64,000 nt of DNA, taken from assembly GCA_964188305.1 (NCBI GenBank), contig OZ076885.1; one strand, given 5' to 3'. This DNA comes from Podarcis bocagei. Its lineage: Eukaryota. Shown piece by piece: positions 5,006-63,609 of the stretch. A program made the position numbers and the translations under genes. The notes beneath the pieces were generated by a model. It did not search any database. It had not been told where the DNA came from and saw only the letters and a program-made list of their open reading frames with translations. The number at the start of each line of letters is the position of its first letter. The first letter of the stretch is position 1.

Positions 5006-5979
5006 CAGTGGTACCCCGCAAGACGAACGCCTCGCGAGACGAAAAACTCGCAAAACGAAAGGTTTTTTCATTTTCGAGTTGCCTCGCAAGACAAATTTCC
5101 CTATGGGCTTGCTTCGCAAAACGAAGCTTGCCCCGGGGACAGCGGGTCTTCTCTTTTGAAGCAAGGGGCGGCGGGGAGATCGCTTCTCCCCACCGCCCCT
5201 TGCTTCAAAAGAGGTCCGGGGGCAGCGGGAAGCGCTCCCGCTGCCCCCGAACCTCTTTTGAAGCAAGCGGCTGCGGGGAGATCGCTTCTCTCTGCAGCCG
5301 CTTGCTTCAAAAGAGGTCCCGGACCTCTTTTGAAGCAAGCGGCTGCGGGGAGATCGCTTCTCCCGGTGCTCCGAAGCCGGGCGGGGGGGGGGGGCGGGAA
5401 CACCTGCCCCAGCCGCCGGGCTCCGGAGCGCTGCTGCGAAGCCGGGCGGGGGGGGAACACCTGCCCCAGCCGCCGGGCTTCGTAGCGCTGCTGCGAAGCC
5501 GGGGGGGGACACCTGCCCCAGCCGCCTGGCTTCGTAACGCTGCTGCGAAGCCGGGCGGGGGGGCGGGAACACCTTCTGAAGGCGGGCGGGGGGCGAAAGT
5601 CTTTGTCCCCCCTGCCTGCCTTCCCAGGGGCTTTTAAATCACCCCGGACAGCGGAGAAGTCCTCCGCTGTCCCGGGGCGATTTTAAAATGCCGCCCGCCA
5701 GCATTTTAAGATCGCCCGGACAGCGGAGAAGTCCTCCGCTGTCCCAGGGTTTTTTAAAATGCTGGGGGTGGGAACAAAAGGCCTTGTCCCCCCCCCCCAG
5801 CCTTCAGAAGAGGTCCGGGGACAGACTGTCCCCGGACCTGGTCTGAAGGCGGTTTCCCTAGGAACGCATTAATTGATTTTCAATGCATTCCTATGGGAAA
5901 CCGTGCATCGCAAGACGAAAAAACCGCAAGACGAAGAGACTTGCGGAACGAATTAATTTCGTCTTGCGAGGCACCACTG
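5006..5979. mobile_element. Young GC/CpG-rich non-autonomous Tc1/mariner (Tigger/pogo-like) element
   Basis: TIRs cagtggtaccccgcaagacgaa / ttcgtcttgcgaggcaccactg; TA TSD at 5004-5005 and 5980-5981; internal palindromes and about 55-bp tandem repeats; no transposase-like ORF. Confidence 0.9.
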
Positions 5980-22066: not shown

Positions 22067-22688
22067 TTCTCCCTTTCGTCTTGTGTTCAAACGTCTTCAA
22101 AATCCATGACACCTTTGGTAAAGGCTGTTCTCTGATTGGAGTGCTCACAGGCCAGTGTTTCCCAGTTGTCAGTGTTTATACTATATTTTTTAATATTTGC
22201 CTTGAGAGAGTCTTTGAACCTCTTTTGTTGATCACCAGCATTACGCTTTCCATTTTTTTAAGTTCAGAGTAGAGTAGTTGCTTTGGAAGACAATAATCAG
22301 GCATCCTCACAAATGACCAGTCCAACGAAGTTGATGTTGAAGAATCATTGCTTTGACACTGGCGATCTTTGCTTCTTCCAGTACACTGGCATTAGTTCTC
22401 CCGTCTTCCCAAGTGATGTGTAAGTCCAACTCACCATGACAAGGTGATGATCCAGTGAGTGAGACAGAGCAAATAAATAAACAGTGTCTCCACTTACGCT
22501 CCCAGTGGCAGGGCTCTCTGACATTTGGAGTTACAACTCTGGTTTCAAGATCACATAATGATCCTTTTAAGTGGACAGGAGTTCATGTAGTTATCAGGTT
22601 CTTACCCTGCCTTTCCATGTCTTCCATTCCCCCATATCTTATGATGATAGAGCAATAGCTGTGCTGTCTTAGTGCCCATCCTATAAAT

Positions 22689-22873
22689 CAGGGGTTGTCA
22701 ACCTGGTCCCTACAGCCCACTAGTGGGCATTTCAGGATTCTAGGGGGGCAGTAGGGGGTTCTACAGCACAAGCTGAATCCTCCTTCTATTGGGCACTGGT
22801 GGGCGGTAAGAAATGTTACCATCAAGAAAGATCCATTAGTGGGCAGTAGGTATAAAAAGGTTGACTATCCCTG
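22689..22873. mobile_element. hAT (Buster/Charlie-like) MITE
   Basis: TIRs caggggttgtcaacct / aggttgactatccctg; perfect 8-bp TSD ctataaat (22681-22688, 22874-22881). Confidence 0.88.
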
Positions 22874-22967
22874 CTATAAATAAAGACTGGACAAAGTTAT
22901 ATAGAGAAAAATGCATGAAAAAGAGTGTGGAAACAAAGAGACACTCGGATTGTGTACTTTCCCCACA

Positions 22968-22970
<3 letters not shown>

Positions 22971-23010
<40 letters not shown>
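22971..23010. repeat. (TA)20 microsatellite at the 3' end of the Penelope-like element
   Basis: Direct reading. Confidence 0.95.
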
Positions 23011-23013
<3 letters not shown>

Positions 23014-23826
23014 TTTCGTAGATTTTCACGGGTACAGGAATGCAGGTTTTGGTGTCTTCGGGTGTCTTCCCGTGTAAGAGTTGGGGTGTCTAGGCGACGT
23101 TTCGACGAGGTCTCACTCGTCATCTTCAGGCTGGTGCTTTCGGCTTCTTGTTACTGGAACAGAGCAGGATCTCAGTGTTTGAGTTCCTATAAATACTGTT
23201 GAGGGGGTGTGGTGTATAGCCTCCAACGTTCTGGGCAGAGAGGAAGTTCCCAGGTTAGTGTGCCTTTTCTTCTTTTGTTCATTAATTACTTGAGGGATAT
23301 CTTGAGTGATTTCTTGAGTGATATTCTGAGTACCACTTAGGAGGGTCATTAGGTGTGGATTAGTTGCTAAAGCTTTCGTGTCTTGACCTCTTGAGCTTGT
23401 GAAGAGTTTTTTCTGAGAAGATGGCTGTACTGCACTTAGTTGTGCTCTGGCTTGGCTTCGTGTATAGGGGCGAGCTGTGGTTTTGTGCCCTGTGCCAGCC
23501 AGATCTGTGTAGGGATTGCAGGGGGGTGCAGCATCCGGAGGTGCCACTATGGTTTGGCTACTGGATGGTGTCTGTAATTTATCTGTGGAGAGGGTCTGGG
23601 TTTGGGTCTGGTGTGGTTGATTGGAGATGGCGTTCTGTGTGCCTCTGGTTCTGGTGTCGGTTTTTGTGGGGAGGGCTATTTTCCAGATGTCTGGCAGGCG
23701 GGACGTATCGTCACGCTTGTTCATGTTGTGAGGGTGTTTCTCTATCTCGATGGCTTCCATGATTATTCTCTTGTGGTGGTGTTCCATGTTAAAGAGCAAT
23801 TTGGAATCTGAAAAATTAATTTCGTG
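23011..23826 (-). mobile_element. 5'-truncated Penelope-like retroelement (Poseidon/Neptune type): GIY-YIG endonuclease C-terminus plus pLTR
   Basis: ORF 23113..23850(-) contains HEINFSDSKLL..HHKRIIMEAIEIEKHPHNMNKRDD..LPDIW, a PLE GIY-YIG C-terminal signature. The frame is uninterrupted and ends PEDDE* inside a hammerhead motif. Flanked by (TA)n. Confidence 0.88.
23092..23133 (-). ncRNA. Minimal type I hammerhead ribozyme in the PLE pLTR
   Basis: Minus strand reads agc-CUGAAGA-u-GACGAG-ugagac-CUCGUC-GAAA-CGUC-gccu: conserved core boxes, 6-bp stem II, palindromic ACGU in place of stem III, GUC cleavage triplet, weak stem I. Confidence 0.75.
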
Positions 23827-23842
23827 TCTTGCTTCACTGACC

Positions 23843-23884
23843 TGCTTCACTGACCTGGGGGGAAACTAGGAAGATGGCACATGG

Positions 23885-23940
<56 letters not shown>

Positions 23941-23982
23941 CCATGTGCCATCTTCCTAGTTTCCCCCCAGGTCAGTGAAGCA
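23843..23982. repeat. Perfect 140-bp palindrome: 46-bp unique arms around (TA)24
   Basis: tgcttcactgacctggggggaaactaggaagatggcacatggcaaa, then (TA)24 at 23889-23936, then its exact reverse complement. Confidence 0.95.
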
Positions 23983-25597
23983 AGAGAAATTCCTCTCATT
24001 TCAATTTGCCTCTACCACTGTGTTCCCCCTCCCTTCAAAAAAACAAAACAACAAACCACAAACCTATTGAAAAACCTGTGCCTTTTGTTGCGTAGACAGA
24101 GTGAAAACTGGTCTCTGAATATCATTTCTCTCCACTCTGCATGATGCAAGATCTGCCGGTGAGTCAGTGATGCGGCACAATCTCTCCCCCTCTCCTCCTC
24201 CAATGCCAACTACTCAGAAACTGCACGACTACTTGAAAGCGTTAGTGAAGTAGAGCACAGGATATTCCCCAAGACAATGAAAAGATTTATTTAGGAGCTA
24301 TCTGTTCAAACAGAGAGTTTGACAAAAGACCCATGTCCATTTCCACAAGGGACCGTGATTTGTAGATAGGGAATTCAAAGCCCAAGCACACTCCTAATAT
24401 GGGTACCAAAGGCTGGAGGGTGTGTGTGAGATGTGGTTCTAATCCCAAGTAAATAGAAGATGCCCAGCACTTCTTTTATTGGCCAAGCACAATCTGATTG
24501 TATTTATTTTATTACAAAAAGAGAACATTGGGATGTCCAGTTAAGAGATGAAAAAGAAGCCTTTTTTTCTTTTCTTTAAAAAAATAAAAATCTCCGTTAT
24601 AGACTTTCACAAAGAAAAAGAAGTGGAGGGGGGGGAATGAAATCCCTCTAGAATAAATATAGACTATGAAAGCACTGTTGAGGTTGCTAAGCAGCAGTGG
24701 CCAGAGGAACAGAAAGCAAGTGAGGCTTTGAAACAGAACCAGTGACTTGTGGGTTAACTGGAGTCATTGCTTACTCTGTTGTCTTTTGTTGCTAGTAATA
24801 GATGAAGGATGCAGCTTTCTTCAGCTGGTTGGGAGGGTATTTTAGGCAATTAACTTTGAAAGGCAGGTTTTTGTACCTCTCTTCTTGTTCAACACAGAGG
24901 AATCTGATGTTATAAATATGATAGTTTACTTTTCCCATTGATGTGTGTTTTGGCTTTGTTATTTTACATCTGTCAACTGAACAGCATTAACTGCCGACAT
25001 ACCATAATGTACCTTTGCACTTTGGGGTAGAATCCTTTAATGAAATAATTATTTTTTTTCTGGTTGATTGGGAACACCTTTGTCATAGGGAAAATCAGCT
25101 GCTTACCAGCCCTTGCACACATTCCAGTCCCCAGATCTCGCCTGGGCAAATGAAGCATAGTCGTTTTCTTGCCTGCTGAATGTTGGTGCCATGGAACACA
25201 ATCCAAAAGATAAGAATTGTTCATTTGACCTTCCCTGATGTAATAAAATGTATACATTGTCATCAGTAAGGTTGAGCCTCCAAATTTGCAGTTCAGTCTC
25301 TGAAAACTCTAGGGATCCTGTATGGTTTCCCTGGCCCCTTAAGTACTCTGTTCTTGGATACATTTGCTATTTGTATTGTGATGTTATAATGAGGGCTGTC
25401 TAGCACATTTTCAAGATGAGTACAGCCCAAACACACCTTATAAAAATGTCCCTGTGTGAAAAAAATAAGTGGAAAACAACCCAAGAAGCCTTGAAGACCA
25501 CCAGTGTATCACCATCCAAGTATCTTGTGGCTTTTGAAAGAGGACACGATAGAGATTTGTAAAATTAGTCAAAGAGTACTGAAAGTAGCATAATATT

Positions 25598-30957: not shown

Positions 30958-31233
30958 CATAGTTCTTCAGGCCTGGATAGCTCAGTTGGTTAGACCATGG
31001 TGCTGAGAACACCAAGGTTGCAGGTTCAATCCCTGTATGGACCAGCTGCATATTCCTGCACTGCAGAGGGTTGGACTAGATGATCCCCAGGGTCCCTTCC
31101 AACTCTACAGTTCTATGATTCTAACCTTGGGTACCAGAGGTTGTTGGACTGCAAGTCGCATCTTGTTTCGTGGTCAGGAATGATGGAAGTTGCAGTCCAA
31201 CAACATATGGAGACCCAAGGTTGAAGCAGGCTG
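30958..31233. mobile_element. Palindromic hAT-like MITE interrupted by a SINE
   Basis: catagttcttca | SINE | accttgggtaccagaggttgttggact...agtccaacaacatatggagacccaaggttgaagcaggctg; cttcaaccttggg pairs with cccaaggttgaag once the SINE is removed. Confidence 0.7.
30970..31123 (+). mobile_element. tRNA-derived SINE with CR1-type tail (Squam3-like)
   Basis: Pol III A box tagctcagttgg, B box ggttcaatccc, and CR1 3' end gggttggactagatgatccccagggtcccttccaactct...ttctatgattcta. Confidence 0.88.
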
Positions 31234-61198: not shown

Positions 61199-62203
61199 AC
61201 CATGAGCAAGCCTGATGAATTCTGCCTGCTTCCCTGTTATGGCAGATAAAATGAATTTGCCACGGCACAACTGCAATTAGTGAAATGCATGTGTCTGTGT
61301 TATTTCTGGAGGGGTAATAATTCCGTGTTGAACTCTGAGCTCATAAATTGCTTGTCACTGTCACATAATGACAGGAAACTTTGGCGTCCCTAATTCTGCC
61401 CACCGCAAGATCTCCCTCCTTCCTTCTTTCTCAGCTGTTCTGCCAGAACATATGAGAATTCAAACAATGATGATTGGTTTCCATTGGTACAGAACTATTC
61501 TCCGGAACATTGAGGGAAGTGATAGTTCAAGGCTGCTCCTTTTCCTCTTTTCATCATTGCCTAGTGTTGTTTTACTTTGCTCATTGCAGAGAGAAACAGA
61601 TTATCCAGTGTGTGGGCTGGCAGCAGCCAGCAGGCTTTCTCATTTTTCCTGCAGTACAACCCAGTGGGGATCTCCAGCAATTTGAAACGTGTATGCATTC
61701 TGGCTGATCTGTCGTCATCGCCACCATTGCCCGCAGTGCATACCCATAAATTCCCAAGGCAGACATGCCATTACACACAATATGATTTGTACTGCAGCAG
61801 CAGCTGGTGAGATAGAGAGATCTCACAGGATGCTGCACAGGAGGAGAAATATTCCCGCACTGGATCAGTCCATTGGGCCATTAAACCTCATGCATTGCCT
61901 CTGGCAGTGGCCACTAGTGGAGGCTTCAAATGAAAACACCACAGAAAGTATTGGGCACATTGAAGAAGGTCAAAAAAGGGCAGCACTTGCTTGAACATGC
62001 CATTAACTATCAGCTTCCAAATTGCCATCCATTCACACATATGAACACATACACACATGTAGAGGACACCTGGTGTGTGTTTGAATGTTGCACTCTCAGG
62101 AATGCTGGTTTGTACTATGCTTGAAGGTGCCATTGCAGTTTAACCTTGGTATACTGATTGTACATAATAGGGCAATTTCACAGTACAGTAACATGTTCTA
62201 GAA

Positions 62204-62341
62204 CACCCTATCTCAACCTGTGGGTCCCCAGATGTTGTTGAACTACAACTCCCATCACCCCTAGCTAGCAAGGCCAGAGCTCAGGGATGATGGGAGTTGT
62301 AGTCCAACAACATCTGGGGACCCACAGGTTGAGAACCGCTG
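62204..62341. mobile_element. Palindromic hAT-like MITE
   Basis: Long arms tctcaacctgtgggtccccagatgttgttgaactacaactcccatca / tgatgggagttgtagtccaacaacatctggggacccacaggttgaga; TSD ttctagaa / atctagag. Confidence 0.88.
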
Positions 62342-63609
62342 ATCTAGAGGATCACTCTCTGAAGTATGTTACACCACACCCATTTTACTCTATTCCTCAT
62401 ATTGTATGCAACACATCAGCCGTATATCACAGCCAACCAGATGATCACATGGTGGACTATAAAAGAGGAAACACATCAAGCAAAGCACTGAGAGACAATG
62501 CATGGCTAGAGAACTGTGTACAGTCTGGGTGTATTAGATTGATCGGGCTACTTCAGTGTTTCGTAGGTCAGCTTAAATTGAAGCCACCAGACAAGGAAGC
62601 TTGAACTTCACCAACAAAGACCAACTGCCTTCTTTTTACACCCTTGAGGTTATATAAAGTGTTGGGCACATTATAATTGGATGCTACTTGCTGAGCAAAG
62701 TGTTTATTTTCTTAGTAGGTGGGAGACAGTGGATTGCACCTTTTACGAGGCCTTTATGGTAATATTATTATAGATAATCGTGCAGGAGAAACCACTCAAA
62801 TGCAGCAATTAATGTCCAATTTGCTTTTCAGCAGCCCAAGGCTGAACTGCTGTGGTTGTAATCCAGTTTAATGACTGCTTTAGGGGGGGGGGAATGTCAT
62901 CTGATAGATGTTTTGCTTTTATAATGGGCATCTTTGCAATCTTCCCAGTTGCCATCACTTAGCGCAACTAAATGAGCACATTAAAGGGAGGCAGAATGAT
63001 GCACAACTATGAAAAACTGTAGCGGAGCTGAGGAGTTATTTTTAGCAAGAAGATACTGATGACTAGTGGTGAGAGCAAGAGTTGCCTTCAGGAAAGTTAG
63101 GATTTAGAATTCATTATTGCCTGTGAATTATAGACAACATCTTTAGCCCTTCAGAACTGAGAGATTATTTTCTGCATGTTGCCTTGATTTCTAAGGCTAG
63201 TAAGGGAGGATTACTTCTTTGGGACATTGGCCTACTAATCAACAGTAGTGAGCACTCTCATTAAAGTGTACTGCTTCATAGCTAATTCCTTTCCTCCACT
63301 GATTTGATATTTTTGAGCATCCTTTATGCAGACAACGGTTTAGACCAGAGACAAGCATGCTGATGAATGAATAGCCTTTTGCCAATAGTTTATGTGAGCA
63401 CAGCTCAACTATTTTAGGTGGCACAAGCTCAAGCTTGCTTATACTGATAGCTCATGTACCTGGTGGGCTACAAAACTGCAACACTACAAAGCTCCAAATA
63501 ATCTGGGTTGTTCTGTGCTGGGCTGAACAACAGTAAGGCTCAAAAAGAAGTTATTATCTGGACAGAACTATCTGAAGCAGATTATCAAGCAGCAAAGGTA
63601 AACAAAGTA

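What the first reader, a model, noticed from the sequence alone, without database searches (positions are those of the whole stretch)
22971..23985. Penelope-like insertion into (TA)n with a fold-back copy of host DNA at its 5' junction
Seen: left flank, (TA)20, PLE in antisense (23011-23826), tcttgcttcactgacc, a 46-bp inverted copy of the right flank, (TA)24, right flank. This gives a perfect 140-bp palindrome (23843-23982) plus a 13-nt tandem stutter (tgcttcactgacc at 23830-23842 and 23843-23855) whose outer copy matches the flank out to 23985. Known: PLEs use a GIY-YIG endonuclease and target-primed reverse transcription, some favour microsatellites, and (TA)n extrudes cruciforms. Inference: the left (TA)n primed cDNA. 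The other end was either hairpin-capped or snapped back on the self-complementary TA tract and then opened about 46-49 nt away (like P-nucleotides), or the RT switched onto the flank and slipped once. Either way it records how PLE 5' junctions are resolved, and here the inverted segment is host DNA, not the usual inverted pLTR. The identical arms imply a recent event.
Basis: partly seen in the sequence, partly recalled or inferred. Interest (0 to 1): 0.8.

Follow-up and report, generated by a model that had tools for sequence, protein, structure and literature searches.

The report
Penelope insertion with fold-back copy of flank
A young, 5'-truncated Penelope-like retrotransposon sits in a (TA)n microsatellite of a lizard genome, joined to the chromosome through an upside-down copy of 49 bases of neighbouring host DNA; this looks like a by-product of break repair that is well known in other systems but that I did not find reported for this element class.

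Summary
There is a perfect 140-bp palindrome (23843-23982) centred on (TA)24-25, a 13-nt tandem stutter, and a second (TA)20.5 tract at 22971-23011. Between them lies an antisense, 5'-truncated Poseidon/PAc-type Penelope-like element (PLE).

Contigs from three related taxa join the left flank directly to the right flank, with only about 41-49 letters between. Their site is therefore empty: short (TA)~9-13, one arm only, no PLE. The arm is single-copy, so it is neither a MITE nor an old palindrome.

New here:
- Other PLE copies match the window up to 23835, not 23826. The PLE and the inverted flank copy therefore overlap by a 9-nt microhomology.
- The PLE 3' end lies at nt 112 of the next ORF. 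That is the reverse-transcription start site published for Anolis PAc, and the 28 nt at 23012-23039 are the known "tail".

Best reading: one event. The left (TA)n 3' end primed cDNA. The reciprocal (TA)n 3' end snapped back on itself and copied 49 nt of flank, with one 13-nt slip. It then annealed to the cDNA end through the 9 nt.

Caveat: no independent data confirm the filled allele, and one near-identical sample seems to lack it. Earlier work in this scan reported a comparable PLE junction elsewhere in this genome. I rate this a new member of a known kind, of moderate interest.

The parts
22971..23011 (.). Left (TA)20.5 tract. This is the part of the target microsatellite whose + strand 3' end primed the PLE cDNA.
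   Evidence: TRF. The empty alleles carry one short TA tract here.
23012..23039 (-). 28-nt PLE 'tail', the stretch between the two alternative reverse-transcription start sites.
   Evidence: Other copies end at 23040 directly against (TA)n: 22, 23 and 6 contigs in X15, X17 and X13 (loose ends). Position 23012 is nt 112 from the ORF ATG at 23123-23121. PAc starts RT 111-118 nt into the ORF, and the tail is the stretch between its two start sites (PMC11167929).
23040..23835 (-). Body of the 5'-truncated PLE: C-terminal half of the GIY-YIG endonuclease domain, the pLTR region, and the first 84 nt of the next ORF.
   Evidence: Protein search and alignment A1: the block EAIEIEK-P-N-RDD-L is invariant. 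Very high summed contig depth shows a high-copy family, with many contigs >=99% alike.
23096..23130 (-). Hammerhead-like core (CUGAAGA, stem II, GAAAC-GUC). The next ORF's ATG lies at the start of stem II.
   Evidence: Read by eye. The layout matches the PAc description (ATG at stem II, cut 26 bp downstream). Rfam gave no hammerhead hit at E<=1. Also noted earlier as s1-354255.
23827..23835 (.). 9-nt microhomology (tcttgcttc), shared by the PLE's truncated 5' end and the reverse complement of flank 23977-23985.
   Evidence: Other PLE copies match the window up to 23835 and then diverge (loose end, 23 contigs in X2, agreement 1). That continuation translates in frame as SSLFQHMKEARHEINF, matching the endonuclease motif of homologues. 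The same 9 nt belong to the 16-nt match with the flank.
23836..23842 (.). The rest of the outer (stutter) copy of the flank. Together with 23830-23835 it forms the first 13-nt unit.
   Evidence: TRF: period 13, 2.2 copies, 100%. Exact match to the reverse complement of 23970-23976.
23843..23888 (.). Inverted copy of the 46 nt of host flank (left arm of the palindrome).
   Evidence: Exact reverse complement of 23937-23982. Absent from the empty alleles.
23889..23936 (.). (TA)24 centre of the palindrome: the right part of the target microsatellite plus its fold-back copy.
23937..23985 (.). Original host flank (right arm, template of the inverted copy). It is single-copy.
   Evidence: One contig per run covers it and continues into 24700. 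It is contiguous with the left flank in X17, X2 and X13 (tables 2, 3 and 8).

Best explanation
This is one insertion event of a PAc/Poseidon-type Penelope-like element into a (TA)n microsatellite.

1. The element's endonuclease cut the TA tract.
2. The + strand 3' end on the left primed reverse transcription at the element's usual internal start site. The cDNA runs 23012 to 23835 and stops inside the endonuclease coding region.
3. On the other side of the break, the - strand 3' end consisted of self-complementary (TA)n. It snapped back on itself and was extended, by the element's RT or by a host polymerase, copying 49 nt of its own flank. It slipped back once by 13 nt at a 2-nt 'ca' repeat.
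4. Its new 3' end (...gaagcaaga) annealed to the cDNA 3' end (...tcttgcttc) through 9 complementary bases.
5. Each end was then extended on the other and sealed.

The result is: L-(TA)20-PLE(antisense)-stutter-inverted flank-(TA)24-flank.

Shown: the anatomy, the empty site, the microhomology, and the PLE identity and start site. Inferred: that it was one event, which strand folded back, and which polymerase acted.

I give about 0.7 to an insertion-coupled fold-back of either polarity. The figure below is for the specific snap-back-of-the-reciprocal-end version.
For: - Anatomy is exact.
- Empty site in three related taxa. X17 record 21 and X2 record 30 join 22849-22956 to 23946-24700 with 41 and 49 letters between. 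X13 record 8 does the same by length and depth. This is too short to hold a second arm or the PLE.
- The arm is single-copy (table 2).
- There is a 9-nt microhomology exactly at the PLE/inverted-copy joint. The chance of this at a random joint is about 4^-9.
- The PLE 3' end at nt 112 of the ORF equals the PAc RT start site. The tail and the preference for AT-rich targets also match.
- PAc protein cleaves and extends both strands in vitro (PMC11167929), so a reciprocal 3' end is available for extension.
- Normal 5'-to-3' resection leaves exactly this - strand 3' overhang (established knowledge).
- Fold-back priming at a break, followed by capture by the other end through NHEJ or alt-EJ, is demonstrated in yeast for 2 to about 150 bp (PMC11724301).
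- Group II intron-type RTs perform snap-back DNA synthesis and MMEJ in vitro.
- L1 insertion sites show inverted duplications attributed to self-annealing of ends (PMC11702581).
Against: - The filled allele is seen only in this assembly. No contig from four runs covers 23839-23919.
- In X15, whose right flank has 0 differences in 755 nt, the contig runs unbroken through 23982/23983. A carrier's k-mer graph should branch there.
- The sequence cannot tell snap-back of the - strand end from a cDNA template switch onto the + strand.
- A single event cannot be proven without intermediate alleles.
- 49-62 nt lies in the upper part of the size range reported for such fold-back insertions.
Confidence: 0.5

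Rival explanations
1. Same single event, opposite polarity. The growing cDNA left the PLE RNA and annealed by the 9 nt to the + strand of the right flank, which was present as a displaced 5' flap. It copied that strand back to the break, slipping once, and then switched through the TA tract onto the - strand.
For: It yields an identical product and uses the same microhomology. RTs of this broad group are known for template jumping (discussion).
Against: It needs about 100 nt of the + strand 5' end to be single-stranded. That is opposite to normal resection polarity. It also needs two further switches (inference).
Confidence: 0.2
2. Two events. An ordinary PLE insertion into (TA)n came first. 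Later, a replication template-switch (quasi-palindrome correction) between the chance 9-nt inverted match in the PLE and the flank replaced PLE 5' sequence with an inverted copy of the flank.
For: Short template-switch mutations that perfect quasi-palindromes are an established mutation class (my own knowledge). Some 9-nt inverted match between roughly 800 nt of PLE and 100 nt of flank is not very unlikely (about 0.3 by my estimate).
Against: It requires a second rare event at the same joint within a very short time. The arms are identical and the insertion is absent from three related taxa. It still needs the extra slip.
Confidence: 0.1
3. Assembly artefact. The PLE and/or the palindrome were created by mis-assembly at the TA tracts or by chimeric reads.
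For: No independent data show the filled allele. X15 looks like a non-carrier, although its right flank is identical to the window. Published work warns that complex PLE insertions cause assembly problems (PMC8557442).
Against: - A TA-mediated mis-join cannot create the joint between the PLE and a single-copy flank in inverted orientation, with a 9-nt microhomology and a stutter.
- The flanks on both sides are collinear with the empty alleles.
- The PLE 3' end sits at the genuine RT start site.
Confidence: 0.12
4. The palindrome arose first in this lineage, by a PLE-independent fold-back at a broken (TA)n. The PLE later inserted beside it.
For: (TA)n-centred palindromes exist without PLEs: sub-threshold Rfam hits are to human (UA)n-looped hairpin families. 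Fold-back inversions need no retroelement.
Against: Three related taxa have one arm only. The PLE would have had to land exactly at the outer edge of the new arm with 9 nt of overlap.
Confidence: 0.05
5. The arms are terminal inverted repeats of a MITE or fold-back transposon, or the hairpin is a microRNA gene.
For: The hairpin scores 40-60 bits against several miRNA models.
Against: The arm is single-copy in four genomes and contiguous with unique flank. There is no other copy in the window. All miRNA hits are below gathering scores and are driven by the (UA)n hairpin shape.
Confidence: 0.01

Closest known systems
PAc (Poseidon of Anolis carolinensis) and the canonical EN+ Penelope-like insertion architecture (Frangieh et al. 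2024, PMC11167929; Craig et al. 2021, PMC8557442)
   Same: - C-terminus of a GIY-YIG endonuclease.
- Hammerhead-like motif with the ORF ATG at stem II.
- RT start about 112 nt into the ORF, and an optional tail of about 28-40 nt.
- AT-rich or (TA)n target.
- 5' truncation.
- An inverted repeat at the 5' side of the insertion.
   Different: The inverted segment next to the 5' end is host flank DNA, not an inverted 5'-truncated PLE copy or pLTR. The palindrome centre is the target microsatellite itself.
Local fold-back (snap-back) templated inverted insertions at double-strand breaks: SD-MMEJ and fold-back inversions (PMC11724301; PMC5728401; PMC2943611)
   Same: An inverted copy of the sequence right next to the break, seeded by self-complementary DNA at the end. 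The newly made strand is captured by the other end through microhomology. There are signs of iterative synthesis (the stutter).
   Different: The break was most likely made by a retrotransposon endonuclease. The capturing end is a cDNA. The seed is a long perfect (TA)n rather than a short imperfect inverted microhomology. The polymerase is unknown.
L1 insertion-site rearrangements: twin priming, and inverted duplications or fold-backs from self-annealing of ORF2p-generated ends (PMC11702581; Ostertag and Kazazian 2001, as cited)
   Same: The reciprocal 3' end of a retrotransposon-made break is extended, and an inversion is joined to the cDNA by microhomology.
   Different: In twin priming the inverted part is element cDNA. 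The L1 fold-backs described are mostly large, chromosome-scale events in cultured or cancer cells. Here a germline-fixed 49-nt copy closes a normal-looking insertion.
Earlier finding of this scan, s1-341794 (same genome, another chromosome piece)
   Same: A young 5'-truncated PLE whose 5' junction carries an inverted copy of host DNA.
   Different: There the copy is reported as 215 nt, including the far junction, with several switches. Here it is the near flank, folded about the TA tract. I did not re-examine that locus.

Membership tests
Penelope-like element, Poseidon/PAc type | C-terminal GIY-YIG endonuclease domain | tested here: met
   Only the C-terminal half is present because of 5' truncation. 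It aligns with 8 PLE-type proteins, with an invariant EAIEIEK..P..N.RDD..L block. phmmer gives E from 6e-13 to 1e-6 against proteins with that domain. Pfam finds nothing on the window fragment itself and only near-threshold GIY-YIG on homologues P0004 and P0003.
Penelope-like element, Poseidon/PAc type | PLE-type reverse transcriptase in the same ORF | not testable with these tools
   The copy is truncated downstream of the RT. Homologue P0013 (841 aa) carries RVT_1 upstream of the matching endonuclease region.
Penelope-like element, Poseidon/PAc type | Hammerhead ribozyme motif in the pLTR | tested here: inconclusive
   The CUGAAGA / stem II / GAAAC-GUC core is visible at 23130-23096 (-), with the ATG at stem II as described for PAc. 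No Rfam hammerhead model matched at E<=1.
Penelope-like element, Poseidon/PAc type | Internal RT start sites giving an optional tail, and AT-rich or (TA)n targets | tested here: met
   This copy ends at nt 112 of the ORF. Other copies end at nt 84 (position 23040) directly against (TA)n. These match the published positions.
Fold-back (snap-back) templated inverted insertion at a break | The inserted segment is an inverted copy of DNA immediately beside the break and is absent before the event | tested here: met
   Exact inverted copy of 23937-23985. Empty alleles in X17, X2 and X13 have one arm.
Fold-back (snap-back) templated inverted insertion at a break | Self-complementary seed at the end, and microhomology where the new strand is captured | tested here: met
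   (TA)n at the centre. 9-nt overlap at 23827-23835.
Fold-back (snap-back) templated inverted insertion at a break | Dependence on a particular polymerase or end-joining pathway | not testable with these tools
   Needs genetics or biochemistry.
MITE / fold-back transposon | Arms (TIRs) present at many loci | tested here: not met
   One contig per genome covers the arm, at single-copy depth, in four runs. There is no other copy in the window.
microRNA precursor families mir-4536, mir-3688, mir-3149, mir-1277, mir-568 | Score at or above the Rfam gathering threshold | tested here: not met
   42-60 bits against thresholds of 75-100. The matches are symmetric on both strands and driven by the (UA)n hairpin.
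L1-type twin priming | The inverted segment is element cDNA primed on the element RNA | tested here: not met
   The inverted segment is host flank.

The most novel reading that the evidence does not exclude
The dimeric PLE enzyme, which extends both cut strands, may itself carry out snap-back, DNA-templated synthesis on the reciprocal 3' end. If so, fold-back priming would be the general source of the inverted-repeat architecture typical of PLE insertions. The preference for self-complementary (TA)n would then be mechanistically linked to this step. This locus would be a trapped case in which the fold-back copied host DNA instead of element sequence.
Probability: 0.2. Interest if true: 0.65.

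Novelty: new member of a known kind. Interest (0 to 1): 0.4.

Why it matters
How Penelope-like elements finish integration is an open question: second-strand synthesis, 5' junction formation, and the origin of their inverted arrangements. The 2024 in vitro study lists these as steps still to be validated.

This locus is a clean natural product with a known before-state. It shows that the reciprocal side of a PLE-cut (TA)n can be extended on itself and then joined to the cDNA by a long microhomology.

It also shows a route by which retrotransposition into TA microsatellites creates perfect AT-rich palindromes, which are potential fragile or cruciform-forming sites.

It is one locus, unconfirmed outside the assembly, and the underlying repair chemistry is already known from other systems. 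Its value is therefore as a lead for a genome-wide census or a biochemical test, not as a discovery in itself.

Tried and rejected
- **Rfam.** No hammerhead hit at E<=1. Only sub-threshold miRNA-type hairpin hits, rejected as shape matches. The whole window at gathering thresholds gave only one tRNA-like hit.
- **Pfam.** Nothing on the window ORF.
- **BLAST of the PLE and both flanks against the window.** No other copy, so no paralogous empty site is available within the window.
- **Exact-protein look-up of the junction-spanning 245-aa ORF.** Not on record, so no second assembly of the junction.
- **Reads.** Only de Bruijn contigs were laid. They cannot span (TA)>=16, and the two arms collapse onto the same k-mers, so the palindrome itself could not be verified.
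- **X15.** It has no laid contigs on the unique parts of the left flank (22434-22700 and 22874-22956). The tool warns that holes prove nothing, and I could not explain this.
- **Hairpin-capping with P-nucleotide-like opening.** Considered and ranked low, because it explains neither the stutter nor the microhomology.
- **Not attempted.** I built no consensus of the element and did not re-examine the other loci noted by the scan.
Full report
**1. What is in the sequence**

Reading 22700-24300, the repeat finder and Tandem Repeats Finder give the following order:
- unique left flank ending ...ccccacactc;
- (TA)20.5 at 22971-23011;
- about 824 nt of non-repetitive sequence;
- a 13-nt unit tgcttcactgacc repeated 2.2 times at 23830-23857;
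- a perfect palindrome at 23843-23982, with 70-nt arms, 100% complementary and no spacer, whose centre is 48 nt of pure TA;
- unique right flank.

A script confirmed three exact relationships. Positions 23843-23888 are the exact reverse complement of 23937-23982. The 16 nt at 23827-23842 are the exact reverse complement of 23970-23985. That match stops at 16 nt.

The 46-nt arm occurs exactly twice in the window, against 0 in shuffles. In the whole 64 kb these are the only two (TA)>=8 tracts and the only perfect palindrome. As single-stranded DNA the region folds at -78.5 kcal/mol, z = -21.7.

**2. What the inserted element is**

The minus strand carries a 245-codon open frame at 23113-23850. 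Pfam does not recognise it. An exhaustive phmmer search found 54 relatives.

Aligned with eight of them, its first 50 or so residues are the C-terminal half of the GIY-YIG endonuclease domain of Penelope-like proteins. The block EAIEIEK-P-N-RDD-L is invariant. One relative of 841 aa has an RVT_1 domain upstream, and two others have near-threshold GIY-YIG hits.

The layout downstream matches what Frangieh et al. 2024 (PMC11167929) report for PAc, the Poseidon element of Anolis carolinensis:
- A hammerhead-like core (CUGAAGA, stem II, GAAAC-GUC) lies at 23130-23096.
- An ATG sits at the start of stem II (23123-23121).
- The presumptive cut is about 26 nt after the ATG.
- The element ends at 23012, which is nt 112 from that ATG. 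PAc starts reverse transcription 111-118 nt into the ORF.

The element is therefore a 5'-truncated, antisense Poseidon/PAc-type PLE. Its 3' end abuts the left TA tract. The + strand 3' end of that tract is thus the primer expected under target-primed reverse transcription.

**3. Evidence from other genomes**

Public runs holding the locus come from several closely related taxa, coded A to H. I laid Logan contigs from four of them on 22300-24700.

- In X17 (organism G), one 2032-nt contig aligns to 22849-22956 with its letters 1-108, and to 23946-24700 with its letters 150-906. Only 41 letters lie between.
- In X2 (organism B), a 1548-nt contig does the same with 49 letters between.
- In X13 (organism F, more distant), the contig covering 23949-24700 has 153 further letters to the left. 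Its depth and end position (table 3, place 22886, 37 letters from the end) show that it reaches 22849. This leaves about 45 letters between.

The window has 989 letters between those points. After subtracting the 14 + 9 flank letters that the tool had masked, these genomes carry roughly (TA)9 to (TA)13 and nothing else. There is no room for the PLE or for a second 46-nt arm.

In every run, bins 23920-24700 are covered by a single contig at single-copy depth. The arm is therefore unique host DNA, not a repeat.

**4. Two further points from the contigs**

First, many contigs from other copies of the element stop matching at 23040 and continue into TA repeats: 22 in X15, 23 in X17 and 6 in X13. 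The family therefore regularly sits in (TA)n and has two alternative 3' ends, 28 nt apart. This corresponds to the published "tail" between two RT start sites.

Second, contigs from other copies match the window up to 23835 and then continue differently (23 contigs in X2, full agreement). Joined to the window and translated, that continuation reads SSLFQHMKEARHEINF... in the element's frame. This aligns with SSLFQHIKTTGHEIDF... in homologues.

So the PLE extends to 23835, while the flank-derived inverted copy begins at 23827. The nine bases tcttgcttc belong to both. An overlap of 9 nt at a random joint has a probability of about 4^-9. It marks annealing between the cDNA 3' end and the sequence gaagcaaga of the flank.

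**5. Mechanism**

The product requires the following:
- a cDNA primed on the left;
- an inverted copy of the 49 nt that lie next to the TA tract on the right;
- one 13-nt re-copying, whose boundaries share the dinucleotide "ca";
- a 9-nt annealing between the cDNA end and the end of that copy.

I favour snap-back of the reciprocal end. After cleavage of both strands in the TA tract, the - strand 3' end on the right is (TA)n. It pairs with itself and is extended along its own strand for 49 nt, with one slip. Its new end then anneals to the cDNA end, and both ends are filled in.

Reasons for this preference:
- PAc protein cleaves and extends both strands in vitro.
- Normal 5'-to-3' resection exposes exactly this 3' strand (established knowledge).
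- The same scheme, with fold-back priming at one end and capture by the other through NHEJ or alt-EJ, has been demonstrated genetically in yeast for inverted insertions of 2 to about 150 bp (PMC11724301).
- Related RTs perform snap-back DNA synthesis and microhomology-mediated joining in vitro.
- Inverted duplications at L1 target sites are attributed to self-annealing of the ends (PMC11702581).

The mirror-image version has the cDNA switching onto the + strand of the flank. It gives the same sequence and cannot be excluded, but it needs the opposite strand to be single-stranded.

A covalently closed hairpin opened 49 nt away explains neither the stutter nor the microhomology.

A later, separate template-switch mutation is possible but less economical.

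A palindrome that existed before the insertion is contradicted by three empty alleles, though it is not strictly excluded for this lineage.

**6. Caveats**

No contig in any of the four runs covers 23839-23919, so nothing outside this assembly shows the filled allele. Part of this is technical. K-mer contigs cannot cross (TA)>=16, and the two arms share their k-mers.

X15 (organism D) deserves separate mention. Its right-flank contig has 0 differences in 755 nt, so it is conspecific with or very close to the source. That contig runs unbroken through 23982/23983, where a carrier's graph should fork towards the stutter. By my inference about assembler behaviour, this sample lacks the insertion. 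That fits a very recent, polymorphic or private insertion, but it also keeps the artefact reading alive.

Against an artefact:
- A mis-join through TA repeats cannot produce a joint between the PLE and an inverted single-copy flank with a 9-nt overlap and a stutter.
- Both flanks are collinear with the empty alleles.
- The PLE ends at a genuine RT start site.

I put the artefact at about 0.12.

X15 also shows no laid contigs on the unique parts of the left flank. I cannot explain this, and the tool says such holes prove nothing.

**7. Comparison with what is known, and novelty**

Already described for PLEs are (TA)n or AT-rich targeting, 5' truncation, the tail, and inverted element copies at the 5' side. 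Fold-back inverted insertions at breaks, and inverted duplications at L1 insertion sites, are also described.

In the papers I searched, I did not find a PLE junction whose inverted segment is host flank folded about the target microsatellite. This scan has reported one comparable PLE junction elsewhere in the same genome (s1-341794). It has also reported many head-to-head PLE pairs in (TA)n (s1-340162, s1-340173). I did not check those.

I therefore class this as a new member of a known kind. It is a well-documented natural example with its empty site, and it is useful as a lead on how PLE integration is completed.

Noticed in passing
window 23012-23040: Copies of this PLE family have two alternative 3' ends, 28 nt apart (23012 and 23040), both directly against (TA)n in other genomes. 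Measured from the ORF ATG at 23123, they lie at nt 112 and nt 84. The first agrees with the published PAc RT start site, and the interval agrees with the published tail.
   Followed up: partly
window 23096-23130 (-): A hammerhead-like core overlaps both the stop of the long frame and the ATG of the next ORF. No Rfam hammerhead model reports it, even at E<=1.
   Followed up: partly
window 23113-23700 (-): The reading frame stays open for about 190 codons beyond the endonuclease domain, through the pLTR, to ...HQPEDDE-stop. A 44%-identical relative (P0002) ends with the same residues. The pLTR may therefore encode a conserved C-terminal extension.
   Followed up: no
window 23856-23969: Sub-threshold Rfam matches (42-60 bits) are all to human miRNA precursor families whose hairpins have (UA)n loops: mir-4536, mir-3688, mir-3149, mir-1277, mir-568. 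Those annotated precursors may themselves be (TA)n-centred fold-back palindromes of flanking DNA, formed without any PLE.
   Followed up: no
window 22689-22873: A very high-copy repeat of about 185 nt lies just left of the target site. Contigs from other copies continue with GTCTAGAC on both sides, which suggests a MITE- or SINE-like element with a palindromic terminal or target motif. All single-copy contigs of the locus break at its edge (22849).
   Followed up: no
protein P0001: A 268-aa predicted protein joins an unrelated N-terminal part (residues 1-163, not identified) to a C-terminus that is 91% identical to this PLE's pLTR-encoded frame. This may be exonisation of a PLE fragment or a gene-model artefact.
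   Followed up: no
window 5151-5364 and 62197-62348: Two other imperfect hairpin-type inverted repeats: 80-nt arms at 84% complementarity, and 66-nt arms at 89%. They are unrelated to TA tracts.
   Followed up: no
window 30978-31036 (+): The only Rfam hit at gathering threshold in the window is a tRNA-like sequence of 34.5 bits. It could be a tRNA-derived SINE head.
   Followed up: no
window 22434-22700 and 22874-22956, run X15: The run whose right flank is identical to the window has no laid contigs on the unique left-flank segments that the other three runs cover. This is unexplained. It could be a filter, a structural difference, or a hole in the data.
   Followed up: no
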